A stretch of 64,000 nucleotides of DNA from Selaginella moellendorffii (GCF_000143415.4 NW_003314345.1:576574-640573); one strand, 5' to 3'. Positions 25,127-56,569 are shown, counted from the first letter of the stretch. The notes: generated by a model not told the origin, from the sequence alone. Numbers and translations: made by a program.

Positions 25127-25387
25127 AAATCTTTATCAAGTGAAGCAAGTATCAACAATCTTCAATGAAATCTACAAGCAATCACTAATCACAAAGCAAC
25201 TAATAATCACTCTTCAACTTGCCTTCACAAGAACCAAACACCTAACTCCCGCCACGAAGTCACATGCGTTTAGTGTTTGGTTCTTGTGAAGGCAAGTTGA
25301 AGAGTGATTATTAGTCGCTTTGTGATTAGTGATTGCTTGTAGATTTCATTGAAGACTGTTGATACTTGCTTCACTTGATAAAGATTT
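25127..25387. repeat. Near-perfect ~115-bp inverted repeat (arms 25127-25241 and 25273-25387)
   Basis: aaatctttatcaagtgaagcaagtatcaac...gaaccaaacac versus gtgtttggttc...gatacttgcttcacttgataaagattt. Confidence 0.92.
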
Positions 25388-31380: not shown

Positions 31381-31426
31381 TATTTGAGACCGGAATGAGA
31401 CTAACACAAAAGGCATGATAACAAGG

Positions 31427-31620
31427 TGTAAGCTCCTAAGTTTGGACTTCTCAAGAGGTCACCCAGCCCAATACTATTCTAACCCAAGGACACTTAACCC
31501 TAAATATCCCAAGACTCTTAATCGATTGGAAAAAAGGGTGCACTTTTATTCATGGGCCCTTTCCCTTTATATTTGAACCCCATGGATTGTCTTTCAAGTC
31601 GTTCTCTTTGGTTGCTTACA
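31427..31620 (-). mobile_element. Cassandra-like TRIM solo LTR containing a 5S rRNA-derived segment
   Basis: 194 bp, termini TGTAAGC...GCTTACA, perfect 5-bp TSD CAAGG (31422-31426 and 31621-31625). Minus strand 31499-31444 reads ggttaagtgtccttgggttagaatagtattgggctgggtgacctcttgagaagtcc, matching the 5S internal control region. Confidence 0.85.
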
Positions 31621-40168: not shown

Positions 40169-41060
40169 GTTAAACAGGAGGCTATGGTAAAGTTTAGTAA
40201 TTTATAGTGTTTTCTGTTAATAAGTTTTAGTTAAGTGGATATACCTATAATATGCTTGCATATTTTGGGATATTCTGTTAATATTCATTTAGATAATCCT
40301 GTATATTTATAATTTAAAAACACTTCCTAGTATATTCTAGTTTATTCTACTATCTTGTTTATAAATTGAAAACACTTTATCATTATTAACTTCTATTTGT
40401 CAATTGATTTAATAAATAATTAATACACAACTATTAAGAAAACCAAGCATTGCTGCATGTGAGATGCAGCAAATGATGTTTTAAAAGAAAAATATTCAGC
40501 TTATTAGCATCCTTGAACATTGTAAATAAAAATATGAGGATTTATATTTCTGATTTGGGATACCTCAGATTTCTTGCACAACAAGGTTTCTGATTCACAG
40601 TAGTACTGGGTTTCAGTGGCAGCTGCCTAGCTCAAAATCTCTCGTCTAGATCGGGTAAGGTTTTCTGATTATATTCTGTTTTGACCATATTTTTTTACAT
40701 TCTTCTAGATTAAAAAATAAAAGAAATGATGTTCTCATCGGCAGTATATATTCTCATGTTCTCTCCAGACACGTGGATGTGTTCTAGGCAGTAAAATTCT
40801 CGCAAATAGAAAAAGATCTTGATCCAGCGACCTGCAGCCAGCATTCTGGATGTCCATTTTCATTTTAAAATGCGGTAAGATCTGGCTTTGCTGTTTTAGG
40901 TTGCGATGGATATGGGAAAAATAAAGTTGCAAATTGTGTATGAGCGTTGGCTGTGCTGGATCACTGCCACAAAAGTTTATGAAAACATTTTTAAAAAAAT
41001 TCTAAACATGTAATTTGAATGTAAAGCTTTAACACATGAGGTATACCCTAAAAAGGGACA

Positions 41061-43274
41061 ATGGGGAGGCGAACGAGGCAGATCTTCGAGGCTGCACAGG
41101 GTTTCACCTTGCCAGTTGCGGAAGACTTCCGGAGCCCACGCGGTGTTTCTAGGTGGGTGAATCGATTTGTATTCGGCGAACATGCCACCACCGCGGCCAT
41201 GCTGGTGTGGCCCGAGCGACATCGGCTGGCAGAATGTAGTGATAAGGAGGAGTTCATGGCTGTTGTGGAATCCATTGAGGAGAGCGACCAAAGTCACGAT
41301 GACACGACTGACATGAGAGGCGCAGTAGCAGTTGAAAAGGTGGCTGGCCAGGACGCAGCACGAGAAGCCTTCTTCGAGTATCCTCTTGAGGACGAGGACG
41401 TACTGGAAGAGCTTTGGTCTAAAATCAAGAGGGATTATTGGACCTGGGCGCTTGGCAACGCTTACGTGGCACCGTTGTTTGCTATTGTGCAGAGTAGCGG
41501 CTGGGGTAAGTCAAGGCTGACTTTTGAGCTCCACCGGAAGGGCTTGTACATCATCTACATTTCGTGCATGAAGGCCAGCCACTCTGGATTTCCCGGCCAG
41601 ACTCCACACTTGGCTGCATGGATTACTCAAGGCAAGCAGCTAACAGTACTGCGGGTGGCTGCGCTTTTGCTCGCCAGCATTGAGGCCCTCGCGGATTATG
41701 TCAAAGGAGGTGGCAATCCTCATGGCTGGATCCTCGACCAGACGGATCCCACCCGTGGCTTTCCTGTAGCGAACGACATAGCAAGTCGACTCCAAGCCTG
41801 TACAAGGCGTCTTGAAGCATCTGCAGCTGCAAAGGCTGCTGCTTTGCCCAGGACGTTTGAAAGACGCACGAGTAGAGAGTCTCACACATACAATGCTGTT
41901 GGGGAAGCATTAAAGACTGCTCTCCGAGACTTGCCTTTGGATGGTATTGGGCAACGACCGGATCAACGCCTCAAGGTCCTGTTTTGTTTTGACGAGGCTA
42001 GCGAGCTGGCGGAGCTGGAACTGGAGGGTGGCATGGATACGGCATTTACACTGCTGAGGCGGGTCCTTGGTAAAGCAGAGTTTGGTCTGTGGGCTCTAGT
42101 GCTTGGTACCAATTCGCGACTATTGGACTTCGTGCCATCCAAGGCGATGGATCCCACCAGAAAGGTGCGGGCTCGAGACTATAAACTGTTTAAGCCGTTT
42201 TGGCTAACGGCCACTGCTGCTGTGCCTGGGGATCTCTCTTCCGGATCCCCAGAAAGCGTCTTCCGCCTAGGAAGACCCCTGTGGCGAGCTTTTATGGACA
42301 AAGGGTACACTTTCAAGGGCTTACGTTTACTTGCAGTGGACAAGCTCAACTGTTCTGGCGAAGTAACAGATGCAACGGTGATTGCTGTTCTCGGCTGCAC
42401 CATCGGCCTGGATGTTGCGTCATGGTCCGAAGCAGCGGAGACGAGTGTGGCTTCTCACATGATGACAGCTTGCTGGATTTCTGACGACCGGCGACGGCTT
42501 CATGTCTCGAATGCCGCAGAACCTGTTCTTGCGGCGGCCGCAGCAGGGTTTTTGCTTCAAGAGGTGACACTAAACAAAGTCCTCGGCGAGCTCTCCAAGA
42601 TGTGCAAGGAAGGAGTGGTAACAGGGGGCCCCCGCGGGAAAATTGTGACCAGGTTACTGCTGCTACTGGCGATGCTAGCGTGTCACAGGGACGCGGGCGA
42701 TGCAACGTTCACGGGAGAGATAAAGCTGGGAGCATTCCTGTCAAAACTGCTGGGAAAAGTTCCTCACGGTCTAGCCTGCACAGTGGACCTTGATGCGGGG
42801 CTCAACTTCAACGGCTTCTCGCCAACTTATAGGAACTTGGAGCGCGGCTTGATCAACGAGTGCTTGCAGCACATTCGAGTGCTGACGTGCAAGCGTGGAC
42901 AGGAAGCCGTGGACAACGTTGTCCCAAGCACTGGCGGTCCAATTGGGATTCAGGCGAAGCGCTGGGAAAGCAACAACTCCACAAAGATGAGGAGAGCGGT
43001 TGGAAAGCTCGAGGCTGGTGTTGGTGGAGTGAACTTTATGCTCGGTATCATTTTACAGCTCGGTTCCCCTGAGCATCGTATCGTTGTTGAAGGTGCTGCC
43101 AACCGGACCATAGTCGTGTACGGGCTATCTTCCGAGTTGTTTCCGTTTCTCACCCAAGCCACTGCCGACAAACTGCTAGATGTGTTGAAAGTCGGGAGTG
43201 CTGAATACTTGCTCCACATGACCGATGGGGAGCAGCGCATTGTGAGACGCATGCTTCCGCTGACTTATCTGTAG
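41061..43274 (+). CDS. Crinkler/RHS (CR)-type P-loop NTPase + restriction-endonuclease-fold protein, 737 aa, intronless
   Basis: Walker A IVQSSGWGKSRL, Walker B LFCFDEA, LGTNS, GRPLW, VASHM and EPVLA. C-terminal C..GQEAVD.VVP....IGIQAK (PD-(D/E/Q)xK-like). Confidence 0.8.
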   Translation: MGRRTRQIFEAAQGFTLPVAEDFRSPRGVSRWVNRFVFGEHATTAAMLVWPERHRLAECSDKEEFMAVVESIEESDQSHDDTTDMRGAVAVEKVAGQDAAREAFFEYPLEDEDVLEELWSKIKRDYWTWALGNAYVAPLFAIVQSSGWGKSRLTFELHRKGLYIIYISCMKASHSGFPGQTPHLAAWITQGKQLTVLRVAALLLASIEALADYVKGGGNPHGWILDQTDPTRGFPVANDIASRLQACTRRLEASAAAKAAALPRTFERRTSRESHTYNAVGEALKTALRDLPLDGIGQRPDQRLKVLFCFDEASELAELELEGGMDTAFTLLRRVLGKAEFGLWALVLGTNSRLLDFVPSKAMDPTRKVRARDYKLFKPFWLTATAAVPGDLSSGSPESVFRLGRPLWRAFMDKGYTFKGLRLLAVDKLNCSGEVTDATVIAVLGCTIGLDVASWSEAAETSVASHMMTACWISDDRRRLHVSNAAEPVLAAAAAGFLLQEVTLNKVLGELSKMCKEGVVTGGPRGKIVTRLLLLLAMLACHRDAGDATFTGEIKLGAFLSKLLGKVPHGLACTVDLDAGLNFNGFSPTYRNLERGLINECLQHIRVLTCKRGQEAVDNVVPSTGGPIGIQAKRWESNNSTKMRRAVGKLEAGVGGVNFMLGIILQLGSPEHRIVVEGAANRTIVVYGLSSELFPFLTQATADKLLDVLKVGSAEYLLHMTDGEQRIVRRMLPLTYL

Positions 43275-43479
43275 TTTTGTTGGCGGAGACAGATTACTCA
43301 TGGAACGCTTTCGTCGATGACAAGTGCAATATATGAGATGAAATTGTTGGATAGCGTCTTTGTGTCCTCCACACCAAGGGATTGATTGATTTGTTCCTTC
43401 ATTGGGACCAACGGTACGGCACGTACCAATGATCACGTGATTGTCCGGATCGAACTTCCGATCTGGTTTATAGTACGGG

Positions 43480-44180
43480 CCGCGTGACGGCGAACTTGCC
43501 CTCGAGTTCATGGAGAATGCCGAGCCGAGCAACAATGTGAGTCAAGTCCGCATTCTTGGTCTGGGACAGAGATTACCCGAAGTTCGGGGCACCGGTCTCC
43601 GCCGTCTCGTGCATGGAAGGTGGATTCCCTTGGCCAATTGGATCATTGGGGAGGAAACTGCAAATGGCTGCTCGCCAGCATTGATGCTCTCGGAGATTAT
43701 CTCAAGCCCTAGCTAGATCCTTGCAACAGCACGGAATGTATGGAGACAAGATTTGAGTCGATTGGCTATCCGGCATGCTACGGTAGGAAGCCTTAGGGAC
43801 TGCTATCCAGCACTTGCCTTTGGATGGTGTTGCTGGTGATCGCCTCAAGGTGTTGTTTTGCTTTGACAAGCTGGCAGAGTTGAAACCGCATGGTGGCCTT
43901 CAGGATTTACGCTGCTGAGGCGAGTTCTTGGAAGAGCAACTTCTGGTGTGTGGGCTCTGGTGCTTTGCACCACCCCTGGTGCAAACAGGGACTTGGCCTT
44001 CTTTTTCCGCCTTGGAAGACCATTGTGGCGAGCTTTGGGAGCAGCATGAGAAGCTTACGCTGCCTTGCATTTGAACTGTTATGGCGGTCTAAACAGAAGC
44101 AAACATGATTGTCACCCTGGACGTAGCATCATGGTCCTGAGAAGCAGAGAATTAGAGTATGAAGCACATGATGACAACAT
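43480..44180 (+). pseudogene. Decayed, internally deleted paralogue of the CR NTPase gene
   Basis: Blocks VSCMEGGFP, LANWIIG, LPLDGVAGDRLKVLFCFD, GVWAL and RLGRPLW are collinear with 41061-43274. Confidence 0.75.
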
Positions 44181-44729
44181 CATTTGTAGTCGCAGTCAGA
44201 GTCCAGGCTGCGTCAGCTCCAGGGTAGCCATGACCTATTGCACTCTTAATGAGCATCTCAACTTCTCTACCATGGTATCAGACTTTTAGCCCCCAGTGAT
44301 CTTCATACTTTGATCAACTATAAGTGATTCCTATGGAGATATGGTGAGCCACGCTGCCTCTTCTATCTTGGAGCAGCATCTCATCCGTCTCTACAACAGA
44401 GATTTCTCTCATAACTATTGTGTCAGGAACTAAACTAGAACTAGCTGCTGGATCTGCAGAACTCCCTGACTGGCAAATCAGAAACAAGTATTTATCCACG
44501 ATTGGAATTGGCCTGGGTGAGCAGTACATTTATCTCTCAGACGACTCAAATGATGGAACGGGGCAATCATTAAAGACATCTATTATTTTGAAAAGCCATT
44601 CAAAATATGCTTCAACATAGTCAAATTTACCCCATTTGCCCAAATCCATATGGCCTGTCTAGTGAATTCTTCCAAGAAATATATAGTGGGGCAGGCTAGG
44701 TAAATCCAAGGTTACCCCAACTCACTTTC

Positions 44730-46240
44730 TAAACTAACTAGTTAAGTGCTTGTTGTGCTGGGAATCCCACAAAAGAGGATGATACTTGGGGTTACCATTT
44801 TTCCACTAGTCAACTGCAAGCCACCCTAGAATTGGCAGAATAGGGGTTCTAAGGCGCCAAATAAGGTGCAATTGCCTCCTATGAATTCTAGTATTGGAGC
44901 TGACCTACCTTGACAATGATCCAATGCCGACACTAGTGATGCCGACACTAGTGAAGAGACTGCTGATGTCCACCATGATCTCCACCACAATTGATTAAAT
45001 CATCCAATTACCTAAGTGTAAATACTCCACTCCAAAACATTGGGGATTGCAATACCTCTCGGGCTTCTTCCAAGTAGCCACTAGTGTTGGTGTGTTGGCT
45101 CCACTCCAAAATCCATTGCTATGGCCATGTGTGCAATGATGTTAAAGGTAGAGATGATGTGGATGCTCATATGGCAGTAGTTTCCATGTATATTTTCCAT
45201 CCATATGCAGTTGAATATAGAGAGTTCTTCCTCTTAATGTATGCATTTCTCCATTGCTTTCATGGTATCAGAGCAATTGGCTCCTTGATCTTACTTGCTA
45301 GCAAGGAGGCCAGTGATGAGGAAGAGGATGAGCTTTTTGATTGCAATCCCTTTTTGCAATACTTGAAGTTTTTGTTAGATGCACTAGATGCTTTAGAGCT
45401 GTTGAACAACAAGTTATATCAAGAAGTGGGTCAAAATTCAAGAATATTGTATAACAATATTTTATAGGAATTTCTAGCAATTGGGAAAGATGTTTATGGC
45501 AATTAAAATGAGTGGTAGTGGCAAAAAAACCATAACCATGTGCTAGTGGCAAGATTGAAGCCTTAACAAGGAGCAAGAGTGTGCGCAAACAAGGCCAAGA
45601 CCAAGAACTAAGTTTTGGGTATTTAATTGATGAATTTTTCATATGTTTTTCTCATCAGCTCTTCATGCTCAACTTCTTAGACACAATTCAAGCTTAAATT
45701 CAAGCTTGAGTGTTAGAGGTAGAAATGATGTGTGCCCAAGTGGCAATAGTTTCCATGTATATATACCATCTATATATAGTTGAATACAAAGAGTTCATGT
45801 GCGCATTTCTCCACTACTTTTACAATGGATCCCTTGCCTAGCTACAAATGACCAACACCAACACAAAGGATCAGGGCTTTAGGGAATCTATTTGGCATCT
45901 ACATGCATTTTGGAGGAGGAATATCAGATGCCATGGAACTTGGAAGTGACAAATGATGGTCAGGTGCTCATTTTACATCATACTTCTTTCTTAAGAGAAA
46001 GAGTGTTATTTGATGAGCTGAACTTTTAAAAATTTTGTGCAAGAGGAAGTTCTTAATGTTGGGGCACTATAACCTTCCCAATTATTTCTTTTAGTGAATT
46101 CATATTTGTCCCACTTAATATTCATTTCTCCATTATCATGGTCTTTATTGATTGTTATTGGCATTGTCTGAGTTGACTTTTCATTGCATTTAATACAGTT
46201 GGTGCCATGAGGTAGTTCTTGTAAATCCATCATTGAATCT
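44730..46240 (+). repeat. Dispersed repeat module (other copies, inverted, at ~50718-51790 and ~60680-61695)
   Basis: Shared blocks such as ccactagtcaactgcaagccaccctagaattggc, caaggccaagaccaagaactaagttttgggtattt and gagtgttatttgatgagctgaac. Confidence 0.8.
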
Positions 46241-46398
46241 TTGGCTCACATATGACAGCTCCTCCTCCTCCACCATGACCACATTATGTTAATTCACATC
46301 TAACATTTCACAATTTCAAAGATTTGTGAACTAAATCGTCACATAGTGTTACAAACGTTTAATATTATTGGTAAATGAGTAAATGTGGTAACAGCATT

Positions 46399-49270
46399 TT
46401 AAAAACACCAACGACTCCTCTTCGTGCTGGGCTCTTCATCAAAACTGTCATCTTGCTCATTACTAGGTTTGTAGACGAGATCAAAACACATAGCACCTAA
46501 TAAACCTACAAATAAAACATAAAAAACTAATAATAAAAGCATTAAAATAACTTACCAAATGGACTCTGTCCATATAAACATTCCTGAACCTTTGGTAAAA
46601 GCATCACCATCCTTTCAGATTTTTTGACTTTGTAAATCAAGTTACCCAATGCTTGATCGGACATAAAGACCATGGCGTAATTCTCACCTGAAAATACACA
46701 CAATTAACCTCCCACAACTAGAAAATAATTACCTTCATTCATCCATTGCTTTATTGTCCATATTTTTTTCTCAAAATTTTCTTCCCAGTTGGCTTGCTGT
46801 CCTTCATAAATATCCCTGTTACACAATACATTACATTGAGCTTTATAAAGGTTTTGTATACCTGTGTTTGCTCTCAATAAATAAAAAGAAATCTTGCAGC
46901 TTGTTCTCAGCATCCACCAGCTGCAGATGGATGAAGCTATCAGGTCCATAGTTGCCAACACCAACCCAATAAAACTGCTGACTGTTGTCTCTTAGGAAGG
47001 CCTGAAATATGTCTGCTGTATATATCTGATGAGGCTGATGTGTCAGACGTCCAAACTTTGCACCAGCTGGCAGCCGGAACTTCAAAGCTTGCATACTTGC
47101 AGGAATGCAGAAATTGGAGGGAAGAATTTCTTGGAGTCTAAATTCAAATATTGTTCCCTTCCTCTCGTGATCATGAAAAAGCCGCAACATATAGATCATC
47201 AACACAATGGACATCAGATCAGATACCTCCTTGTTTTTGGGATTAGAGATTAGTTTAAATGGACACAAATCCTGGAGCTCCGCCGCATGTAGGTTCTCAA
47301 CGAGATGGTAAATGAGGAGTGGAGAGAACATGATGGAGAAAGCAGCATCTTCATCTCTTGATAATTTAATCTTCCTGTTAGATGGCAGCTCCTGTAATTG
47401 ACAACCATAAGTTCTGACATAAACTCTGAAATATCAAAATAGTACCTCGTTGTGTAAGAGTCGAACTAAACCGCAAGACTCTAAAGACCCCCAGTTATCT
47501 TCGTATCTGCTACCTGGCCAGACTAGTTCTTCCCGACTGATCAGGGTCCCCAGCAGCGCAACATAAAAAGCTCGTAACACCAACAAATACTTATCGTCCT
47601 TAAGGTACCGATAATAAAAACCACGTTTGATATTACCCCAGGCGGTCGTTATTGTGTTATGGAGATCGATTTGAGTGATTGATTCACCTGTAACAAACAT
47701 AGAAAATTTTCTCATCACATCAAGATAAAAGACATGGAAACCTTTTCATAGAACTTCGAAGCATCCAGGTCAGGCATCAACCCTCTCAAAAGGTGAACAA
47801 GCATGCGAGGATTCCCTCCTGATAACTTTATCAGGTTTCTTAGTCCGTCCTTCAGCTCAAATGGTTTCTCCATGTCCAGAGTATTTCCTAGTCTTGTAAG
47901 GAAGATTTTCGTAACTCTGACCACCTCCTGCTCTTTCAAAGGCCTGATAGGTATAAAAATACTCAGAGCCTTCTCCGTTGATGTGTAGCGCATTGTGGCC
48001 CCGGCAAATTCGGTCGTTGCTGCTGTAAGTATAGGAAACGTCAGGCCACCTCGGTTATCTTTGATATATTGAACGTAGGCCGAGAAAGCATCATGAATCC
48101 AGGACGATGCGGGTGGGCGGCCGTGCTGAGGCCGGGCCTTGTTGACATCATCAAAAAACCAAGATAGGAAAATTCGCTTATCTGCAGGAACCTTAAGACC
48201 AGTTCGAATGAAGTCGATCACATCTCCGAAAGTCAGCACATTCCTCAGGCCTGGAAATTTGTCATCCAACTGCCTGAGAAAGCCGCCATAACCAGTAGTA
48301 TGCACTGGACAAAGAGCTGCATGAAAGCACCGAAGGGCCAAAACCTGTTCTGCTGCCAGGCCGTTCTCCAGGAGAGTTACATCCCCTGCCCTCGTAGTTT
48401 CAACCGAATGATACATTGTAAGATCTCTGCCGGTATCCAACACGTTGTTCACCATTTCTTTGAACTGCTTCACAAGCCCTTTGTCGCCTAGCTGATCCTC
48501 TACAAGGCCATCTATATCAGTGTCCCTCTCCCACGCTTCTCTGAGAAGAGCTGAGAGGCATGTCCCGACAGTTGTTTTACCTGCGCCGGGAAATCCGATG
48601 AGCATCAACAAGAACTCTCTTTGTTCAATATCCGAGGCATTGGCCGTCGTGTTCATGAAAGTTCCAAACACCCTTGCAGCGGCTGCCATCAGATGCTGAG
48701 TCGTCTCCTCCCTTCCGACCAAAGTAAAATATTCTCCCAAGTCCGTACATAAACCACCGTTGTCCAGAAGAGGTAACTTGCAGCTTGGCACCCTCTTCTC
48801 AGGCATCCGGTGAAAACACCTTGCGCGCTGCAGTGTTTCTCCGTATACATCCAGCAACTTGGACACTACAACACAAACCGATCCAAAACGAACTCTTTAG
48901 CAAGCCAGACAGACAAGAGCGAGTGCTTACCTGGCGCAGCTTGAAGTGTTATCGCCGCCGGGGTCGCTGAAACAGAAATATAACAAATAAGCAAATACTT
49001 AGCCACAAAACGAGGAAACAGGCAAACATAGAGGAGGCGAAATGAGATAGACCACTTACTCTGGTTTAACAAGGCATCCCACAGCTGCTGCTGTCTATCC
49101 TGCAGCTGCTCCCTCTCGTCCTGCAGCTGCTGTCTCTCGTCCCGCAGCTCCTCCCTCTCCCATGGATCTTTTGCCTCTTCGATTAGCTTCTTGAGTGCTT
49201 CGATTTGCTGCTTGAGTGCTTCGATCTTGTCCTCGAGTGCTTCAATTTGCCTCGCAATGGATGCAGACAT
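46399..49270 (-). CDS. 8-exon CR-type gene: coiled-coil header + P-loop NTPase + PD-(D/E)xK nuclease + basic C-terminal motif; apparent frameshift at the start of exon 4 (pseudogene or assembly error)
   Basis: Exons 49270-49060, 48966-48931, 48865-47742, 47687-47446, 47391-46862, 46815-46733, 46687-46556 and 46496-46399, all GT-AG. Header IARQIEALEDKIEAL..ERQQLQDEREQLQD; LVGRE; Walker A GFPGAGKTT; Walker B WFFDDVN; SGGNPRML; nuclease NYGPDSF...FLFIESKH; tail PSTKRSR. Confidence 0.7.
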
Positions 49271-50354
49271 TGTTAACCCTAGTCGCCAAATGGGCTCTGC
49301 GGGCCCATAAAACTTATATAATTGACAATTACGATACGCTTGTCGTCCTAAAATATGCCCTTCCCCACTTTGGGGACCTGAAGGAACGAAAGGATGCTGT
49401 TGCTCTTGATACTGTGGTGGTCGACCTGGAGCGTACTGTGCTTGAGGGAAAGGTAGTGACGCCCCTGTAAACTATATATCAGCGATTAGCAGCGACCGAG
49501 CATAGCTCCTTTCCTTCCGTTGAGGTTGGCGAACCTGTTTCCAGCCCAAAGGTACACTCTGGGACAATGGACTATGGCACGGATGAAGATGCACCTGTGG
49601 TTCTTTGGGCCGTTCTAGGGTACAGGTTGGCTTCGTCCCGCATGTTCCACATCAAGCTCCACCATGAGGATCCACCTCCGGTTAAGCAACAGATCTGGAT
49701 TGAGTGGTGGCAATGGGCATTTGCCAGCTTTGTCACGGAGCATCTAGTGCGGGACAAGCTGCGAGACAGGAGCTTGAGTGGGTCTCCTGCTCTGACCTGG
49801 CTCTTAAGACTGGAGGGGGATTGGATGTTAAGAGTATATGCTCTCTATGACATGATCCTAGGTGGCAACAATGCCACTTCATTGATCGAAGTGTAGGCTA
49901 GAGGCATGTCTCTTCATCATGTATATTTGGTTATGACATTATATTTGACTATCCTTAAAGTCATCCTTACCCATTGTTTTGCTCCCGTGCACTTCTTCTT
50001 TCATGGTTTTGATTCAGTGTGGGACTTATACACATGGGTTATGATATCATTTTGCAACCTTCTTCTCTTAACAATAAATATATTCAACTCCTTCATGGAT
50101 TTTGCCTATTGTCTCGGCAAATGTGAAGCATAATTCACTAAATGTTGGATTGTTCACTTGTCAATAAGGAATAAGGAACGTGAGCTGGGCTTAGATAAAT
50201 CTCACATGTTGACCAAGCTGGGCCGTTTGCGCAAGGCTGTCAGCCTGTCAATATTTTCAAATATTTTTTGTATATAGAGTCATGAACTATATATAGAAGT
50301 AAAATAATAACTATTAAAGATTAACTTTATATAAGAAAGATAAGAATCTCCATA

Positions 50355-50680
50355 TACATGCTGAATCGTCTCCTCCCTTTCGACCAAAGTAAAATATTCT
50401 CCCAAGTCCGTACATAAACCACCGTTGTCCAGAAGAGGCAACTTGCAGGTTGGCACCGGCATCCGGTTGTGCACTGCAGTTTTTCTCCATATACATCCAG
50501 CAACTTGGATACTACAACACAACCTGATCCAAAAAGAACTCATTAGCAAGCTAGACAGACAAAAGCAAGTGCTTACCTGGTGCAGCTTGAAGTGTTATCA
50601 CCGCTGGGTTGCTGAAACAGAAATATAGACTTGTCAGTACTCGGCCATAGCCACAAAAATGAGGAAACAGGCACGCAGCT
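50355..50680 (-). pseudogene. Partial duplicate of intron 1, exon 2 and the start of exon 3 of the central CR gene
   Basis: ITLQAAP|g and CKLPLLDNGGLCTDLGEYFTLV.REET match 48700-49020. Confidence 0.85.
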
Positions 50681-52329
50681 AGAGAGGCCAAAGCAAACAA
50701 AATCACAAAATGATGTACTATATATGGATGGTATATATACATGGAAACTACTACTTGGCATTCATCATCTTTACCTCTAACACTCAAGCTTGAATAATTG
50801 TGCTTACTTAGTCTAAAATGTTGAAGAGCTGATAAGAAAAACATATGAAAAATTCATCAATCAAATACCCAAAATTTAGTTCCTGGTCTTGGCCTTGTTT
50901 ACACACACTCTTGCTCCTTGTTAAGGCTTCAATCTTGCCATTAGTATATGGTCTTGGTTTCTTGCCGCTACCAAGCACTTAATCTCCATAAACACCTGCA
51001 AAGCATTGTTATACAATATTCTTGAATTTTGACCCAATTCTTGATATAGGTTGTTAAAATCTCTCAATCTTTCTTACTGCTACTTATTGTTCAACAGCTC
51101 TAAAGCATCCATGCATCTAACAAAACCTTCAAATATGGCAAAAAGGGATTGCAATCAAGAAGCTCATCCTTGTCCTCGTCACTGGCCTCCTCGCCAGCAA
51201 GTGCCATGCCCAAGATCAAGGAGCCAATTACTATTGTTGAAGGAAAAGGTTGAAGAGATACCATGAAAACAGTGGAGACATGCACACGAGGAGGAAGAAC
51301 TCTCTATATTCAAGTGCCACATGGGCATCCACATCATCTCTACCTTTAACACCATTGCACACATAGCCATAGCAATAGAGTTTGGAGTGGAGCTAACACA
51401 CCAACACTAGTGGCTACTTGGAAGAGGTATTGCAATCCCCAACGTTTTGGAGTGGACTTGCTTCCAATATTTTCTCTTAGGTAACTGGATGATTTGATTG
51501 ATTGCAGTGGAGATCATGGTGGACATCAGCAGTCTCTTGGCTATCACTAGTGCTGGCATAAGATCATTGTTAAGGTAGGTGGAGAATTTGCAGCTCCAAT
51601 GCTAGAATTCACAAGGGGCAATTGCACCTTATTTGGTGCTTTAAAGCCCCTATTCTGTCAATTCTAGGGTAGCTTGCAGTTGGACTAGTGGAAATGGTAA
51701 CCCTGCATCATCCTCCCAAACACACTTTATCATCCTCTTTTGTGGGATTCCTCTTAACAAGCAATTAGCTTAACTAGTTAGTTTTGGGTAACCTTGGATT
51801 TACCTAGCCTGCCCCATTAAATATTTCTTGGAAGAATTCACTACACATAAGTTGACACATATTTTGGATGGCTTTTCAAAATAATGGATGTCTTTAATTG
51901 TAACGAAGTGTAAAAATTTGCCGCATTCCATCATTTGAGTTGTCTAAGAGATAAATGTACTGCTCGCCCAGGCCAATTCCAATTGTGGATAGATGCTTGT
52001 TTCTGATTTGCCAGTCAGGGAGTTCTGCAGATCCAGTGGCTGGTTCTAGTTTAGTTCCTGACACAATAGTTATGAGAGAAATCTCTGTAAGTTGTAGAAA
52101 GGGATGAAATGCTGCTCCAAGATAGAAGAGGCAGCGTGGCTCACCGTATCTCCATAGGAATCACTTATAGTTGATCAAAGTATGAAGATCACTGGGAGCA
52201 GCTAAAAGTCTGATACCATGATAGAGAAGTTGGGATGCTCATCAAGAGTGCAATAGGTCATGGCTGCGTCTACCCTGGAGCTGACGCAGCATGAGCCTGG
52301 ACTCTGACTGCGACTACAAATGATGTTGT

Positions 52330-53090
52330 CATCATGTGCTCCATACTCTAATTCTCTGCTGCTCGGGACCATGACGGTACGTCCAGGGCCACAATCACGT
52401 TTGCATCTGTTCAGACCGCCATAACAGTTCAAATGCAAGGCAGTGTAAGCTTCTCACGCTGCTCCCAAAGCTTGCCACAATGGTCTTCCAAGGCAGAAAA
52501 AGAAGGCCGGATCAGGCCGACAAACTGGGGGAGGCACAGTGCAAGTCCCTGTTTGCAACAGCGATTCCTTTGGTGGTGCAATAGTCGAAGATGGATTGGT
52601 ACCAAGCACCAGAGCCCACACACCAGAAGTTGCTCTTCCAAGAACTCCGTAAATCCTGAAGGCCACCATGCGGTTTAAACTCTGCCAGCTTGTCAAAGCA
52701 AAACAACACCTTGAGGCGATCACCAGCAACACCATCCGAAGGCAAGCGCCGGATAGCAGTCCCTAAGGCTTCCTACCAGACAGATCCCTGTAGCATGCCG
52801 AATAGCCAATTGACTCAAAGATTGTCTCAATGGATTCCGTGCTGTTGCAAAGATCTTGCTAGGGCTTGAGATAATCTCTGAGGCGAGCAGCCATTTGCAG
52901 TTTCCTCCCCAATGATCCAATTGGCCAAGGGAATCCACCTTCCATGCACAAGACGGCGGAGACCAGTGCCCCGAACTTCGGGTAATCTCTGTCCCAGACC
53001 AAGAATGCGGACTCGACTCACATTGTCGCGCGGCTCGGCATCCTCCATGAACTCGAGGGCAAGCTCGCCGTCACGGGGTCCGTACTATAA
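52330..53090 (-). pseudogene. Decayed CR NTPase paralogue (right-arm copy)
   Basis: DGVAGDRLKVLFCFD, GVWALVLGTN and FCLGRPLWQA blocks. Confidence 0.75.
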
Positions 53091-53292
53091 ACCCTGTATC
53101 CAGATCGGAAGTTCGGATCCGGACAATCACGTGATCATTGGTACGTGCCGTACCGTTAGTCCCAATGAAGGAACAAATCAATCAATCCCTTGGTGTGGAG
53201 GACACAAAGACGCTATCCAACAATTTCATCTCATATATTGCACTTGTCATTGACGAAAGCGTTCCATGAGTAATCTGTCTCCGCCAACAAAA

Positions 53293-55509
53293 CTACAGAT
53301 AAGTCAGCGGAAGCATGCGTCTCACAATGCGCTGCTCCCCATCGGTCATGTGGAGCAAGTATTCAGCGCTCCCGACTTTCAACACATCTAGCAGTTTGTC
53401 GGCAGTGGCTTGGGTGAGAAACGGAAACAACTCGGAAGATAGCCCGTACACGACTATGGTCCGGTTGGCAGCACCTTCAACAACGATACGATGCTCAGGG
53501 GAGCCGAGCTGTAAAATGATACCGAGCATAAAGTTCACTCCACCAACACCAGCCTCGAGCTTTCCAACCGCTCTCCTCATCTTTGTGGAGTTGTTGCTTT
53601 CCCAGCGCTTCGCCTGAATCCCAATTGGACCGCCAGTGCTTGGGACAACGTTGTCCACGGCTTCCTGTCCAGGCTTGCACGTCAGCGCTCGAATGTGCTG
53701 CAAGCACTCGTTGATCAGGCCGCGCTCCAAGTTCCTATAAGTTGGCGAGAAGCCGTTGAAGTTGAGCCCCGCATCAAGGTCCACTGTGCCGGCTAGACCG
53801 TGAGGAACTTTTCCCAGCAGTTTTGACAGGAATGCTCCCAGCTTTATCTCTCCCGTGAACGTGGCATCGCCCGCGTCCCTGCGACACGCTAGCATCGCCA
53901 GTAGCAGCAGTAACCTGGTGACAATTTCCCCGGGGCCCCCTGTTACCACTCCTTCCTTGCACATCTTGGAGAGCTCGCCGAGGACTTTGTTTAGTGTCAC
54001 CTCTTGAAGCAAAAACCCTGCTGCGGCCGCCGCAAGAACAGGTTCTGCGGCATTCGAGACATGAAGCCGTCGCCGGTCGTCAGAAATCCAGCAAGCTGTC
54101 ATCATGTGAGAAGCCACACTCGTCTCCGCTGCTTCGGACCATGACGCAACATCCAGGCCGATGGTGCAGCCGAGAACAGCAATCACCGTTGCATCTGTTA
54201 CTCCGCCAGAACAGTTGAGCTTGTCCACTGCAAGTAAACGTAAGCCCTTGAAAGTGTACCCTTTGTCCATAAAAGCTCGCCACAGGGGTCTTCCTAGGCG
54301 GAAGACGCTTTCTGGGGATCCGGAAGAGAGATCCCCAGGCACAGCAGCAGTGGCCGTTAGCCAAAACGGCTTAAACAGTTTATAGTCTCGAGCCCGCACC
54401 TTTCTGGTGGGATCCATCGCCTTGGATGGCACGAAGTCCAATAGTCGCGAATTGGTACCAAGCACTAGAGCCCACAGACCAAACTCTGCTTTACCAAGGA
54501 CCCGCCTCAGCAGTGTAAATGCCGTATCCATGCCACCCTCCAGTTCCAGCTCCGCCAGCTCGCTAGCCTCGTCAAAACAAAACAGGACCTTGAGGCGTTG
54601 ATCCGGTCGTTGCCCAATACCATCCAAAGGCAAGTCTCGGAGAGCAGTCTTTAATGCTTCCCCAACAGCATTGTATGTGTGAGACTCTCTACTCGTGCGT
54701 CTTTCAAACGTCCTGGGCAAAGCAGCAGCCTTTGCAGCTGCAGATGCTTCAAGACGCCTTGTACAGGCTTGGAGTCGACTTGCTATGTCGTTCGCTACAG
54801 GAAAGCCACGGGTGGGATCCGTCTGGTCGAGGATCCAGCCATGAGGATTGCCACCTCCTTTGACATAATCCGCGAGGGCCTCAATGCTGGCGAGCAAAAG
54901 CGCAGCCACCCGCAGTACTGTTAGCTGCTTGCCTTGAGTAATCCATGCAGCCAAGTGTGGAGTCTGGCCGGGAAATCCAGAGTGGCTGGCCTTCATGCAC
55001 GAAATATAGATGATGTACAAGCCCTTCCGGTGGAGCTCAAAAGCCAGCCTCGACTTACCCCAGCCGCTACTCTGCACAATAGCAAACAACGGTGCCACGT
55101 AAGCGTTGCCGAGCGCCCAGGTCCAATAATCCCTCTTGATTTTGGACGAAAGCTCTTCCAGTACGTCCTCGTCCTCAAGAGGATAGTCGAAGAAGGCTGC
55201 TCGCGCTGCGTCCTGGCCAGCCACCTTTTCAACTGCTACTGCGCCTCTCATGTCAGTCGTGTCATCGTCACTTTGGTCGCTCTCCTCAATGGATTCCACA
55301 ACAGCCATGAACTCCTCCTTATCACTACATTCTGCCAGCCGATGTCGCTCGGGCCAAGTTCCCACCCGCACGGCCGCGGCGACGGCATCTTGGCCGAACA
55401 CAAATCGATTCACCCACCTACAAATACCGCGTTGGCTCCGGAAGTCTTCCGCAACTGGCAAGGTGAAACCCTGTGCAGCCTCGAAGATCTGCCTCGTTCG
55501 TCTCCCCAT
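53293..55509 (-). CDS. CR-type NTPase + REase-fold protein, second near-identical copy (~738 aa from ATG)
   Basis: Intact ORF with the same motifs as 41061-43274. Differences cluster in the N-terminal ~60 aa and at GGPGEIV versus GGPRGKIV. Confidence 0.8.
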   Translation of the reverse strand: MGRRTRQIFEAAQGFTLPVAEDFRSQRGICRWVNRFVFGQDAVAAAVRVGTWPERHRLAECSDKEEFMAVVESIEESDQSDDDTTDMRGAVAVEKVAGQDAARAAFFDYPLEDEDVLEELSSKIKRDYWTWALGNAYVAPLFAIVQSSGWGKSRLAFELHRKGLYIIYISCMKASHSGFPGQTPHLAAWITQGKQLTVLRVAALLLASIEALADYVKGGGNPHGWILDQTDPTRGFPVANDIASRLQACTRRLEASAAAKAAALPRTFERRTSRESHTYNAVGEALKTALRDLPLDGIGQRPDQRLKVLFCFDEASELAELELEGGMDTAFTLLRRVLGKAEFGLWALVLGTNSRLLDFVPSKAMDPTRKVRARDYKLFKPFWLTATAAVPGDLSSGSPESVFRLGRPLWRAFMDKGYTFKGLRLLAVDKLNCSGGVTDATVIAVLGCTIGLDVASWSEAAETSVASHMMTACWISDDRRRLHVSNAAEPVLAAAAAGFLLQEVTLNKVLGELSKMCKEGVVTGGPGEIVTRLLLLLAMLACRRDAGDATFTGEIKLGAFLSKLLGKVPHGLAGTVDLDAGLNFNGFSPTYRNLERGLINECLQHIRALTCKPGQEAVDNVVPSTGGPIGIQAKRWESNNSTKMRRAVGKLEAGVGGVNFMLGIILQLGSPEHRIVVEGAANRTIVVYGLSSELFPFLTQATADKLLDVLKVGSAEYLLHMTDGEQRIVRRMLPLTYL

Positions 55510-56569
55510 GGTGTTGAGCAACCCTAACCCTCGGTCTGGCCCTTTCTAGGGTATATACCTTGGAAATACAACACTTCATTCAGGTGCTTGATGATAAAGG
55601 TATATATATATATAGATATATATAAGAAGAGCCCAAGAAAAGGGATGTTTATGAAAATGAGATTGTGTGGCAGTGATCCACCACCATACCAAGCAGAATC
55701 TGTAACTTTATTAAATGAAAATGTAGCTCACAAACAAGCTGATGCATTTTGAATCCCACCCTCTCTCCAACTCTCACATGACGGGCTGGTGATCATATTT
55801 TTACCATAACATTGTAAATATAGGTGAAATATTATGATTTGCCAAGTGAACAAGGATAAAAACCTCCTTGTGTGAAACTTCTGACACTCACACCGTCCTA
55901 TTACATACTTCAGCCCAAACCTCAAAAGAAGAAATTGTTAAGCCTGCCACCACTTTCATTTGTTCCATAGCTGTGATTCTACTTGCACTCAAATGAAATA
56001 ATAATACATGTTTTGGGTCTGTTCACTCCCATCTGGAAGCATAAGACCACTGGGAGGAGGCCAGAAGTGGCTACAAAGAGGATAAAAGAGCAAGCGTACT
56101 TGAGCAAGTGCTAGGCTTCAAGCAAATCACTGATATTTCATGGTTTTCCATATGCTATAATCAGGGACAACCACCAAGTTTAAATAGATCAGCTTTTCAT
56201 GGCCACAGTTTTTACAGGTAATTCAAGTAAAAAACGTTTCATGAACACTTAGCAGATTTAACCCATGCCAAAGTATGTCAAACACGAGATCATCCGCCAA
56301 AGAGTCTGATCTGGAAGACATTCCTCTAGCTTCTTAAGCCAACATCTCCTCATTGTTTGAGATTGAGTCCATATCCACAGAAATGTACTCTCCTGCCACG
56401 GTCTGCTACCATAGCTGCTTTGTTTGAGCACATCTCCAGCTATGGTCGATGGCAATGCTGCTCCATAACACTGACTCAAGATAACACCCACCACCTCATA
56501 CCGAGCTTGCAACCACCAAGGTGTTAAAAGCTTATAGAGTTTGATGCTGCCAGTCATAACAAAGATCAC

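What the first reader, a model, noticed from the sequence alone, without database searches (positions are those of the whole stretch)
40850..55730. ~15 kb palindrome of NTPase-nuclease (Crinkler/RHS-type) genes enclosing a third, different NTPase-nuclease gene
Seen: two ~5 kb arms in inverted orientation. Each carries an intact, intronless ~740-aa P-loop NTPase + REase-fold gene pointing inward, followed by a decayed paralogue. The ~4.9 kb spacer holds an 8-exon header/NTPase/PD-(D/E)xK gene of a different subfamily and a partial duplicate of it. Known: NTPase+REase CR proteins are best described as oomycete/fungal effectors and have been proposed to derive from transposons. Coupling a STAND-like NTPase to a nuclease also recalls prokaryotic antiviral systems. 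Inference: this is a dedicated plant locus of nuclease effectors, either an immune/cell-death or selfish-drive cluster, or a composite mobile unit mobilised by its own nuclease.
Basis: partly seen in the sequence, partly recalled or inferred. Interest (0 to 1): 0.85.

Follow-up and report, generated by a model that had tools for sequence, protein, structure and literature searches.

The report
Inverted pair of plant ATPase-nuclease genes
A real 14.5-kb inverted duplication in the spikemoss Selaginella carries two intact copies of an uncharacterised ATPase-plus-nuclease gene, kept alike by gene conversion, around a third, unrelated ATPase-nuclease gene that is frameshifted here; it looks like a fast-evolving host gene cluster rather than a transposon, and its biological role is untested.

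Summary
Arms 41058-45780 (+) and 55512-50717 (-) are an inverted repeat, 88% identical overall and 98-100% in the ORFs. Each arm has an intact, intronless, inward-pointing 737/738-aa gene followed by a 0.5-kb fragment of a distant paralogue.

The window is Selaginella moellendorffii scaffold GL377649.1. A confident AlphaFold model (pLDDT 88.7) and motif conservation give a helical header, an AAA+/STAND-like P-loop NTPase, a helical linker and a C-terminal alpha-beta-beta-beta-alpha-beta domain with conserved D...QxK. No profile or fold search gave a significant nuclease hit.

The family is large (1216 cluster representatives) and found in fungi, ferns, lycophytes and protists. It has no Pfam model and no Crinkler header. 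Two lineages look shared with a fern, and dN/dS is about 0.3.

Site patterns show ORF-limited gene conversion between the arms.

The spacer gene (coiled coil, TnsC-like P-loop, PD..ESK) belongs to a different, Selaginella-only family. Under canonical splicing it is frameshifted in this window but open in the other scaffold.

That scaffold carries the same arm units dispersed over 65 kb, not as a palindrome. No transposon termini, target duplications or transposase were found.

Verdict: a birth-and-death cluster of NTPase-nuclease genes, with the mobile-unit reading unsupported and function unknown but probably in genetic conflict.

The parts
41058..45780 (+). Left arm of the inverted duplication
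   Evidence: blastn against 55512-50717, 87.8% over 4964 columns; 18 collinear inverted blocks. Its non-coding tail is closest to the P0003 copy on GL377673.1 (94-97%).
41061..43274 (+). Left arm gene: intact, intronless, 737 aa. Helical header (~1-105), AAA+/STAND-like P-loop NTPase (Walker A K150 = nt 41508-41510; Walker B D311/E312 = nt 41991-41996), helical linker, and C-terminal PD-(D/E)xK-like domain (D618 = nt 42912-42914; Q631-A-K633 ending at nt 42959)
   Evidence: ORF and translation. AF2 pLDDT 88.7, pTM 0.83. Motif conservation in 85 relatives. Foldseek best hits are AAA+/STAND ATPases. dN/dS 0.3-0.6.
43664..44188 (+). Fragment of a distant paralogue of the arm gene (aa ~240-485 only, frame-broken)
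   Evidence: tblastn, 33-45% identity in three frames. Present downstream of all five arm-type copies.
44775..46271 (+). Dispersed repeat 'R', forming the inner end of the left arm and running 490 bp into the spacer. A full copy lies at 61685-59051 (-) and a truncated copy in the right arm at 51784-50717
   Evidence: Self-blastn. The copy on L003 continues through the full repeat.
46271..46283 (.). Unique junction (~11 bp of filler) where collinearity with both alt-scaffold loci ends: a rearrangement breakpoint
46400..49270 (-). Spacer gene, 7-8 exons, inferred from GT-AG sites and frames. E1 coiled-coil header 49270-49060; optional micro-exon 48966-48931; P-loop NTPase exon 48865-47742; exon 47685-47446; nuclease exons 47391-46862 (PD...ESK at 46941-46867), 46815-46733, 46687-~46556; last exon ~46505-46400
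   Evidence: Frames and ORFs. Sequence and splice-site enumeration. Paralogues P0186-P0188 carry the NTPase C-terminal part and the nuclease in one protein. The profile hits VchTnsC at E=5e-4. Not annotated in the window's record.
47674..47682 (-). Site where the window's spacer gene is 4 bp shorter than the copy on GL377673.1. With the canonical exon 3/4 splice, the window copy meets a stop 12 codons into exon 4
   Evidence: Alignment and phase-0 translations of both copies. Only a non-orthologous 44-nt intron would keep it open.
50358..50692 (-). Partial duplicate of the spacer gene: 3' part of intron 1, the micro-exon, and the start of the NTPase exon
   Evidence: blastn, 82.5% to 48693-49042; translation.
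50717..55512 (-). Right arm of the inverted duplication
   Evidence: Its tail is closest to the P0002 copy on GL377673.1 (93-99%).
52279..52772 (-). Right-arm copy of the paralogue fragment
   Evidence: tblastn.
53293..55509 (-). Right arm gene: intact, intronless, 738 aa, 96.9% identical to the left copy

Best explanation
This is a structurally unstable, birth-and-death cluster of host genes for ATP-dependent nucleases in Selaginella moellendorffii. It is not a mobile element.

Shown:
- A ~4.7-kb unit (gene, paralogue fragment and repeat R) was duplicated in inverted orientation before the two scaffold lineages diverged.
- Since then, recurrent gene conversion limited almost exactly to the ORF has kept the two coding sequences 98-100% alike, while the flanks drifted to 86-94%.
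- The genes are under moderate purifying selection.
- The protein is a variable helical header, an AAA+/STAND-like P-loop NTPase, a helical linker and a C-terminal domain with PD-(D/E)xK topology and a conserved D...QxK.
- It belongs to a large, unnamed, patchily distributed eukaryotic family that in vascular plants appears to predate the lycophyte-fern split.
- The spacer carries an architecturally parallel but unrelated gene (coiled coil, TnsC-like NTPase, PD..ESK nuclease) that is frameshifted in this haplotype.

Inferred:
- The NTPase assembles or switches on nucleic acid, as ORC/Cdc6, MuB and TnsC do, and licenses cleavage by the nuclease domain.
- The header, which differs between lineages, sets targeting or partners.
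- The clustering, copy-number flux, pseudogenes and haplotype polymorphism are those of a genetic-conflict family, either defence against invasive DNA or a domesticated selfish nuclease.
- The palindrome itself is a by-product of segmental duplication that favours conversion, not a functional device.
For: Palindrome and intact ORFs.

Species and scaffold.

Gene conversion:
- Outside the ORF, 78 informative sites support (winL, altP0003)|(winR, altP0002), against 5 for the other groupings.
- Inside 41208-43274, 0 sites support that grouping and 7 support (winL, winR)|(alt, alt).
- The longest identical run between the arms is 411 nt.
- dS between the arm ORFs is 0.022, against 6-14% divergence in the tails.

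Selection: dN/dS is 0.21-0.57 among close copies and 0.32 against the P0005/P0007 paralogues.

Fold and motifs:
- AF2 pLDDT 88.7.
- Walker A K150 in 81/85 relatives; Walker B D311 and E312 in 85/85; T350 in 83/85; D618 in 80/85; Q631 in 70/85; K633 in 73/85.
- D618 sits at beta-2 and QxK at the end of beta-3 of an alpha-beta-beta-beta-alpha-beta unit.
- Top Foldseek hits are PAB2304 (prob 1.0), MuB (0.99), ORC/Cdc6, CED-4, RdrA and TnsC.

Family size and spread: 1216 representatives at E<1e-3. Named members come from Adiantum, Calcarisporiella, Paraglomus, Ascosphaera and Peniophora, plus several Selaginella subfamilies.

Vertical signal: the arm clade pairs with Adiantum P0009 (SH-aLRT 97) and Selaginella P0018 with Adiantum P0021 (99).

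Not a transposon:
- The homology boundary is fuzzy.
- The alt-scaffold copies have different extents.
- Other members are single genes among housekeeping genes.

Birth and death:
- The alt P0004 copy has a premature stop.
- Fragments lie next to intact genes here and at L007.
- The window's spacer gene is frameshifted while the alt copy is open.
Against: - No significant sequence or fold match ties the C-terminal domain to a solved or curated nuclease. Foldseek gives nothing below E=1e-3; Pfam, PDB-profile, PHROGs, PADLOC and NCBIfam searches are empty or marginal.
- The Q in QxK replaces one canonical acidic residue, so catalysis is unproven.
- There are no expression data. The window's spacer gene was not even called by the annotators.
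- The palindrome is absent from the only other copy of the region, so it could be young, polymorphic or, less likely, an assembly error.
- The intronless genes, patchy eukaryotic distribution and a 14-member cluster at >=90% identity in Selaginella are also what a selfish element would show.
- The tree is a quick search with long branches and midpoint rooting.
Confidence: 0.6

Rival explanations
1. Composite mobile element: the two arms act as giant terminal inverted repeats, and the NTPase-nuclease (TnsC/TnsA-like) mobilises the 14.5-kb unit.
For: - The arms are inverted and enclose cargo.
- Both NTPases resemble transposition AAA+ ATPases: MuB and TnsC in Foldseek, and VchTnsC at E=5e-4 for the spacer profile.
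- From my own recollection, not checked here, D...QxK is the variant reported for Tn7 TnsA.
- The genes are intronless and multi-copy.
- NTPase+REase modules are said to derive from prokaryotic transposons (PMC5289972).
Against: - Arm homology fades over ~45 bp with indels just upstream of the ATG rather than ending at defined termini, and there is no convincing target-site duplication.
- No transposase or integrase ORF lies in or near the unit.
- On GL377673.1 the same arm units lie 24-63 kb apart in other orientations, with different extents and with shared outside flank. That is segmental duplication.
- The inner arm ends lie inside an unrelated dispersed repeat.
- Other family members are solitary.
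Confidence: 0.06
2. Assembly artefact: one arm is a mis-joined haplotype or paralogous copy in the 2011 Sanger two-haplotype assembly.
For: - The other scaffold carrying this region has no palindrome.
- Collinearity with both alt loci ends at the same point, 46271-46283.
- The assembly mixes two haplotypes (my own knowledge of the Selaginella genome project).
Against: - The arms differ by 6-14% and many indels in their tails.
- Each arm has its own distinct closest counterpart on the other scaffold.
- There is no N or gap in 38-64 kb.
- The junction is unique sequence with ~11 bp of filler, not a shared repeat an assembler would collapse through.
- The left and right arms have different outer flanks, each matched on the other scaffold.
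Confidence: 0.12
3. Hairpin small-RNA locus: read-through transcription of the convergent, near-identical ORFs gives long double-stranded RNA that silences the family. Inverted gene duplications are a known origin of plant siRNA/miRNA loci, and the proteins would be incidental.
For: - The two ORFs are convergent, 98-100% identical and 10 kb apart.
- The family is multi-copy.
Against: - Both ORFs are intact with dN/dS below 1.
- Conversion also homogenises the non-palindromic copies on the other scaffold.
- There are no RNA data and no Rfam hit.
Confidence: 0.08
4. Foreign DNA: fungal or oomycete effector genes, either contaminating the assembly or recently transferred.
For: - Many relatives are fungal.
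- The genes are intronless, unlike their neighbours.
Against: - The genes are embedded in an 833-kb plant scaffold beside subtilase, signal peptidase and NIF phosphatase genes.
- Paralogues lie on at least six further scaffolds among plant housekeeping genes.
- The nearest non-Selaginella relatives are from a fern.
Confidence: 0.03

Closest known systems
Crinkler-RHS-type (CR) proteins with an NTPase + HTH + REase C-terminal module (Zhang et al. 2016, as summarised in PMC5289972 and PMC6131194)
   Same: Modular plan: a lineage-specific N-terminal header, then a P-loop NTPase, a helical DNA-binding-like linker and a PD-(D/E)xK-type nuclease. Occurs in fungi, protists and non-pathogenic land plants, with lineage-specific expansions and clustered copies.
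   Different: No ubiquitin-like Crinkler header and no LxLFLAK/HVLVxxP in 96 members. No signal-peptide-like N-terminus. The window arm proteins have no RHSP Pfam match. Sequence homology to the defined CR-NTPase and CR-REase families could not be tested. These are endogenous, apparently vertically inherited plant genes, not pathogen effectors.
Transposition AAA+ ATPases MuB and TnsC, and the Tn7 TnsA restriction-like nuclease
   Same: The arm NTPase model matches MuB (8xvb, prob 0.99) and VchTnsC (7ufi, prob 0.87). The spacer NTPase profile hits VchTnsC at E=5e-4. A D...QxK nuclease motif is, from memory, the TnsA variant.
   Different: Here the ATPase and nuclease are fused in one polypeptide. 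There is no TnsB-like transposase, no element ends and no target-site duplication. All E-values are marginal.
ORC/Cdc6, the archaeal PAB2304-type ATPase, and STAND ATPases (CED-4, plant NLR ZAR1)
   Same: These are the best overall fold neighbours of residues ~130-560: 2qen prob 1.0, 1fnn 0.85, 8jol 0.90, 6j5t 0.63. They share Walker A, Walker B and sensor-1-like motifs.
   Different: TM-scores are low (0.2-0.5) and no hit is below E=1e-3. No NB-ARC or NACHT Pfam match and no repeat sensor domain. The C-terminus is a nuclease-like domain instead.
Prokaryotic helicase/NTPase-nuclease fusions (AddAB, AdnAB, DdmD) and ATPase-nuclease antiphage proteins
   Same: NTPase followed by a PD-(D/E)xK nuclease. 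Several appear among the top 50 Foldseek hits over long alignments (4cej, 7sjr, 9bf1).
   Different: Probabilities are 0.07-0.3, and there is no PADLOC or NCBIfam match. This is a resemblance in architecture only.
Large palindromes with arm-to-arm gene conversion (for example the ampliconic palindromes of primate sex chromosomes; from my own knowledge)
   Same: Inverted arms carry intact genes, and arm-to-arm identity in the genes exceeds identity to the allelic or orthologous copy.
   Different: Here the conversion tract is confined to the 2.2-kb ORF rather than the whole arm. It also operates between non-palindromic copies 60 kb apart on the other scaffold. Overall arm identity is only 88%.

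Membership tests
Crinkler / CR effectors | N-terminal ubiquitin-like header with LxLFLAK and a terminal HVLVxxP motif (Pfam Crinkler domain) | tested here: not met
   A regex over 188 fetched proteins found no LxLFLAK or HVLVxxP in a header position. A Pfam scan of 96 N-termini and of the arm proteins gave no Crinkler domain.
Crinkler / CR effectors | C-terminal module of P-loop NTPase + helical/HTH linker + REase-superfamily nuclease | tested here: met
   Walker A, Walker B and D...QxK motifs are conserved in 85 relatives. The AF2 model shows an NTPase core, helices 488-564, and an alpha-beta-beta-beta-alpha-beta unit at 595-666. The match is in architecture only.
Crinkler / CR effectors | Sequence homology to the defined CR-NTPase and CR-REase families or to bona fide CRN/RHSP proteins | not testable with these tools
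   Zhang et al. 2016 is not held, and no CRN sequences or profiles could be fetched. The Pfam scan of the window arm proteins gave no RHSP hit at E<=1.
Crinkler / CR effectors | Delivery into another organism's cells (secretion or translocation) | not tested
   The N-terminus MGRRTRQIFE... is hydrophilic by eye. No predictor was run. These are endogenous plant genes.
PD-(D/E)xK (restriction-endonuclease-like) nucleases | Core alpha-beta-beta-beta-alpha-beta topology | tested here: met
   In the AF2 model (pLDDT mostly >90 in this stretch): H595-603, E606-609, E619-621, E628-632, H640-652, E661-666.
PD-(D/E)xK (restriction-endonuclease-like) nucleases | Catalytic D at beta-2 and (D/E)xK at beta-3, conserved across the family | tested here: inconclusive
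   D618 is conserved in 80/85 relatives and K633 in 73/85, but the middle residue is Q631 (70/85), not D/E. The spacer family has a canonical D...ESK.
PD-(D/E)xK (restriction-endonuclease-like) nucleases | Significant profile or fold match to a known member | tested here: not met
   A PDB profile search with the C-terminal alignment gave 0 hits at E<=10. Pfam gave only DUF4365 (E=0.063) and Mrr_cat (E=0.055) in 3 of 67 members. PHROGs gave none. Whole-chain Foldseek hits to AddAB/AdnAB have prob <=0.3. A domain-only fold search was not possible.
AAA+/STAND P-loop NTPases | Walker A GxxGxGK[ST], Walker B hhhhDE, and sensor-1 polar residue after beta-4 | tested here: met
   QSSGxGK[ST]R, hhhhD311-E312 (85/85) and T350 (83/85).
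AAA+/STAND P-loop NTPases | Significant fold or sequence match | tested here: inconclusive
   Foldseek probabilities are 0.8-1.0 for PAB2304, MuB, Cdc6, CED-4 and RdrA, but the best E-value is 4e-3. Pfam AAA models are below threshold.
DNA transposon with terminal inverted repeats | Sharp termini flanked by a target-site duplication | tested here: not met
   A five-copy alignment of the outer boundary shows graded homology with indels and no consistent duplication.
DNA transposon with terminal inverted repeats | Element-encoded transposase or recombinase | tested here: not met
   No such ORF or Pfam hit in 40.8-55.7 kb.
DNA transposon with terminal inverted repeats | Copies of identical extent at unrelated sites | tested here: not met
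   The three copies on GL377673.1 end at different points and share outside flank.
Gene-converting palindrome | Arm-to-arm identity exceeds identity to the allelic or orthologous copy within the converted tract | tested here: met
   98.8-100% against 96.8-98.7% across most of the central ORF (41454-42426), and the site-pattern switch at the ORF borders.

The most novel reading that the evidence does not exclude
The cluster is a working plant genetic-conflict module. The convergent pair of ATP-gated nucleases, together with the unrelated coiled-coil NTPase-nuclease between them, would act as an innate defence or cell-death trigger against invasive DNA, or as a toxin/antidote-like selfish (drive) system. 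It would have been inherited in vascular plants since before the lycophyte-fern split, and its haplotype polymorphism (palindrome with a broken middle gene, against dispersed copies with an intact middle gene) would be maintained by that conflict.
Probability: 0.1. Interest if true: 0.8.

Novelty: new member of a known kind. Interest (0 to 1): 0.4.

Why it matters
NTPase-nuclease 'Crinkler-like' proteins are studied as pathogen effectors. What their counterparts do inside free-living hosts is an open question (PMC5289972, PMC12957317).

This locus offers a concrete, well-delimited plant case:
- a large family with no Pfam model and a confident predicted structure;
- apparent retention in both lycophytes and ferns;
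- purifying selection;
- ORF-restricted concerted evolution;
- a natural contrast between haplotypes, one with a palindrome and a frameshifted middle gene, the other with dispersed copies and an open middle gene.

That makes ordinary tests feasible: expression, ATPase and nuclease assays, and Walker A or D/K mutants. If the family proves to be a DNA-targeting defence or selfish system, it would extend the prokaryote-like ATPase-plus-nuclease logic to early vascular plants. If not, this is simply a well-documented example of gene conversion in a segmental duplication.

Tried and rejected
- AF2 with the 6-sequence Selaginella alignment gave an unusable model (pLDDT 39.5). It was replaced by an 85-sequence alignment.
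- Whole-chain Foldseek against PDB and BFVD gave nothing below E=1e-3.
- Sequence and profile searches of the arm protein or its C-terminal domain were empty or marginal: Pfam, PADLOC, NCBIfam, PHROGs and PDB.
- hhalign of the arm family against the spacer family, both whole proteins and nuclease domains, was not significant (prob <1%). The Walker B, sensor and D...xK motifs did line up.
- Word-based homologue searches for the spacer gene found only Selaginella proteins.
- Zhang et al. 2016 could not be read. No paper in the library cites these locus tags.
- A brute-force exon-path search timed out and was replaced by per-junction enumeration.
- I considered an empty-site reading of L002, where left-flank-like sequence follows the spacer. 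I rejected it because that sequence is a short dispersed repeat also found at L003 and L006, and in the wrong orientation.
- I considered tandem-duplication and inversion models for the 46271|46283 junction. Neither is fully consistent with the flanks available, so the origin is left open.
- Rfam, tRNA and tandem-repeat scans added nothing.

Full report

Yes. Self-comparison aligns 41058-45780 with 55512-50717 in inverted orientation at 87.8% over 4964 columns. It appears as 18 collinear inverted blocks. Identity is 99% over 1425 nt and 98% over 820 nt in the coding part, and 83-97% in the tails. The stretch contains no N; the only gap in the window is 28167-28631.

Each arm holds an uninterrupted, intronless ORF pointing inward: 41061-43274 (+, 737 aa) and 55509-53296 (-, 738 aa). 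They are 96.9% identical in protein.

Downstream of each ORF, tblastn finds a frame-broken fragment matching only aa ~240-485 at 35-40% identity, at 43664-44188 and 52772-52279. The 'decayed paralogue' is therefore a 0.5-kb relic.

The inner 1 kb of both arms belongs to a dispersed repeat R, also present at 61685-59051.

Arm homology starts only ~20-45 bp upstream of the ATG and fades through indels. The two genes therefore have different upstream regions.

**2. Where is it from?**

The arm protein is identical to a gene on GL377649.1, an 832,636-bp scaffold of the Selaginella moellendorffii assembly GCA_000143415.2. The window is 576,574-640,573 of that record.

Positions 1-21 kb of the window carry ordinary plant genes: subtilase, signal peptidase S26, NIF phosphatase and an APH-like kinase. 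Positions 22-39 kb and 57-62 kb are AT-rich degenerate repeats.

**3. What are the arm genes?**

Pfam, NCBIfam, PADLOC and direct PDB sequence searches give nothing.

An exhaustive profile search found 1216 cluster representatives at E<1e-3, of which 421 are below 1e-10. Named members come from:
- the fern Adiantum;
- the fungi Calcarisporiella, Paraglomus, Ascosphaera and Peniophora;
- a protist transcriptome;
- many metagenomes;
- several further Selaginella subfamilies, one with 14 members at >=90% identity.

With an 85-sequence alignment, AlphaFold gives a confident model (pLDDT 88.7, pTM 0.83). Across the 85 relatives the conserved motifs are:
- Walker A, QSSGxGK[ST]R (K150 in 81/85);
- Walker B, hhhhDE (D311 and E312 in 85/85);
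- a sensor-like T350 (83/85);
- C-terminally, GxD618 (80/85)...P622...Q631 (70/85)-x-K633 (73/85)-N.

In the model, D618 precedes beta-2 and QxK closes beta-3 of an alpha(595-603)-beta-beta-beta-alpha(640-652)-beta unit. That is the canonical PD-(D/E)xK layout.

Foldseek on the whole chain finds no hit below E=1e-3. Its best neighbours are consistently AAA+/STAND ATPases: PAB2304 (prob 1.0), MuB (0.99), Cdc6/ORC, CED-4, RdrA and TnsC. A few NTPase-nuclease fusions (AddAB, AdnAB, DdmD) appear at low probability.

Profile searches with the C-terminal domain alone give no significant nuclease match. Only DUF4365 and Mrr_cat appear, at E~0.06, in 3 of 67 members.

My reading is that the NTPase assignment is solid. 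The nuclease assignment is well supported by topology and motif but not proven, and the Q in place of D/E is a caveat.

The N-terminal ~100 residues are helical, conserved among the Selaginella paralogues and unrelated to the N-termini of other members, where mean column identity is 7%.

**4. Is it a Crinkler/CR protein?**

By architecture, yes. Header, NTPase, helical linker and REase is the commonest CR C-terminal layout, and CR homologues were reported from land plants (PMC5289972; PMC12957317).

By the testable defining features, no:
- None of 96 members has the Pfam Crinkler domain, and none has LxLFLAK or HVLVxxP.
- The window arm proteins give no RHSP match.

I therefore file it as 'works like / built like' a CR NTPase-REase, with membership open.

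**5. Evolutionary behaviour**

The scaffold GL377673.1 carries three arm-type copies:
- P0003 at ~310 kb, on the minus strand;
- P0004 at ~334 kb, on the plus strand;
- P0002 at ~373 kb, on the plus strand.

A five-way alignment shows that in the 5' 150 nt and the whole non-coding tail, the left arm is closest to the P0003 copy (93-97%). The right arm is closest to the P0002 copy (91-99%). Left against right is only 85-94% there. Across most of the central ORF (41454-42426), left against right is 98.8-100%, higher than either allelic comparison.

Site patterns make this explicit:
- Outside the ORF, 78 informative sites support (L,P0003)|(R,P0002), against 5 for the alternatives.
- Within 41208-43274, none do, and 7 support (L,R)|(P0003,P0002).
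- The longest identical run between the arms is 411 nt.

The duplication therefore predates the divergence of the two scaffolds, and the ORFs, almost exactly, have since evolved in concert.

dS between the arm ORFs is 0.022, and dN/dS is 0.21-0.57 among the five copies. Against the 53%-identical paralogues P0005 and P0007, dN/dS is 0.32. This is moderate purifying selection, so the genes are not pseudogenes. The P0004 copy has a premature stop at codon 428.

A quick maximum-likelihood tree pairs the arm clade with Adiantum P0009 (SH-aLRT 97), and Selaginella P0018 with Adiantum P0021 (99). The two pairs join in one plant clade (93). This suggests two lineages older than the lycophyte-fern split. 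The caveats are that it is a quick search, with long branches and midpoint rooting.

**6. The spacer gene**

On the minus strand there are:
- a coiled-coil exon starting at the ATG at 49270, with heptads visible as a 21-nt tandem repeat;
- a 1.1-kb exon with GFPGAGKTT and a hhhhDD Walker B;
- further short exons with canonical GT-AG introns of 45-60 nt, reaching a stop near 46400.
These exons include PD...ESK at 46941-46867.

The Selaginella paralogues P0186-P0188 carry the C-terminal NTPase part and the nuclease domain in one protein, and D...ESK is invariant among them. P0187 adds a weak kinase fragment.

The NTPase profile's best PDB hit is the transposition ATPase VchTnsC at E=5e-4.

Searches found this family only in Selaginella, though the method was limited. 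hhalign finds no significant link to the arm family.

Splicing matters here. With the canonical exon 3/4 splice, which reproduces the paralogue's ...EKV|NQD... junction, the copy on GL377673.1 stays open. The window copy is 4 bp shorter near 47678 and stops 12 codons later. Only a non-orthologous 44-nt intron would rescue it. The window's record has no gene model here.

The 'partial duplicate' at 50692-50358 is a 335-bp copy of intron 1 to the start of the NTPase exon.

**7. Is the palindrome conserved, mobile or an artefact?**

On GL377673.1:
- The right flank, right arm and spacer are collinear with the window down to 46280, then continue into an O-fucosyltransferase gene with no left arm (L002).
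- The left flank and left arm are collinear up to 46271, then continue through the full repeat R (L003).
- The third copy (L001) has right-type flank but ends at window 52542.

In the window, the two paths meet at a unique junction: 46271, ~11 bp of filler, then 46283. It lies ~120 bp beyond the spacer gene's stop.

This argues against a transposon. The copies differ in extent, share outside flank, have no sharp ends or target duplication, and there is no transposase.

It also argues, less decisively, against misassembly. The arms are distinct, each has its own counterpart, there is no gap, and the junction is not in a shared repeat. Only long reads can settle this.

Other family loci are single intact genes among housekeeping genes: L005, L006, L007 and a metagenomic contig with MCM and Piwi neighbours. 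L007 has two flanking fragments. Inverted pairing is therefore not a recurring feature of the family, but fragments beside intact copies are.

**8. Mechanism**

Shown:
- an inverted segmental duplication;
- ORF-limited gene conversion;
- purifying selection;
- NTPase motifs;
- nuclease-like topology and motif;
- structural and coding polymorphism between scaffolds.

Inferred:
- The protein is an ATP-gated nucleic-acid nuclease. Its AAA+/STAND-like module assembles on or is switched by a ligand or DNA, as its fold neighbours ORC/Cdc6, MuB and TnsC do.
- Its lineage-specific header provides targeting.
- The birth-and-death dynamics point to a conflict role, either defence against invasive DNA or a domesticated or selfish nuclease.
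- The palindrome is most economically a by-product of duplication that facilitates conversion.

I put 0.6 on this package. The rivals are an assembly artefact (0.12), a hairpin siRNA locus (0.08), a composite mobile unit (0.06) and foreign DNA (0.03).

**9. Novelty and score**

NTPase-REase CR-like proteins in land plants are already in the literature. Palindromes with gene conversion are a known phenomenon.

What is new here is the specific, well-characterised locus:
- a large family without any curated model, but with a confident structure;
- apparent lycophyte-fern conservation;
- ORF-restricted concerted evolution;
- a haplotype contrast.

I rate it a new member of a known kind, with interest 0.4. 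The most novel reading still open is a functional conflict or drive module. I give that about 0.1 probability and an interest of 0.8 if true.

Noticed in passing
window 47674-47682 (-) and L002 ~17740-17760: The two scaffold copies of the spacer gene differ by 4 bp in exon 4. The GL377673.1 copy reads through in the paralogue's frame, while the window copy stops 12 codons later. The annotators called a 468-aa gene on the other scaffold and nothing in the window.
   Followed up: yes
L001 10001-12235 (GL377673.1 ~334 kb): The third arm-type copy (SELMODRAFT_428879) has an in-frame stop at codon 428 that the annotation hides in an 'intron'. It shares the right-type outer flank but ends at window-equivalent 52542.
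   Followed up: partly
window 46560-47391 vs L002: Divergence between the two scaffold copies of the spacer gene is mosaic. dS is 0.02-0.04 in the header, NTPase exon and exon 4, ~0.10 in the nuclease exons, then identity returns to 100% at 46400-46290. This may be another conversion tract from a paralogue.
   Followed up: partly
window 22458-38868 and 57866-59470: There are two tandem ~9-kb copies (~80-81% identical) of an ORF-poor, AT-rich repeat upstream of the palindrome. A partial inverted copy lies downstream. The same family lies upstream of the P0002 copy (L002 288-7301).
   Followed up: no
window 39392-39488 / 40072-40168 and 40234-40459: A MITE-like small inverted repeat (97-nt arms) sits beside a short dispersed repeat. 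The dispersed repeat also lies next to other family loci: L002 19451-19960 as 189-bp tandem units, L003 8830-9641, and L006 14406-14513.
   Followed up: partly
L001 ~9860-9900; window 55513-55555: Plant telomere-type (CCCTAAA)n repeats lie directly upstream of the P0004 copy. A GGGTTAGGGTT telo-box-like motif lies in the 5' leader of the right-type copies only. Left and right arm genes therefore have different upstream regions.
   Followed up: no
window 59934-60095 (+): Weak extra fragment of the arm superfamily, matching P0018 aa 365-418 at E=3.7e-5, inside the repeat-rich region right of the palindrome.
   Followed up: no
P0187 (SELMODRAFT_420523), aa 594-640: A paralogue of the spacer gene combines the NTPase C-terminal part and the PD..ESK nuclease with a weak protein-kinase fragment. 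This recalls the REase+kinase CR architecture.
   Followed up: no
L007 6069-6719 and 21326-21968: Another Selaginella subfamily gene (SELMODRAFT_429380) is flanked on both sides by same-strand partial copies of itself. Fragments beside intact genes recur in the superfamily.
   Followed up: partly
window 28167-28631: This run of N is the only assembly gap in the window. The overlapping ORFs 27952-28687 on both strands are artefacts of it.
   Followed up: yes
window 208-1989 (-) and 266-1052: A GC-rich 593-aa ORF with internal ~190-bp imperfect repeats and no Pfam match lies at the left edge of the window.
   Followed up: no
window 9955-10580 / 12684-13287: A 626-bp direct repeat at 90.7% identity lies within the gene-rich left part of the window.
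   Followed up: no
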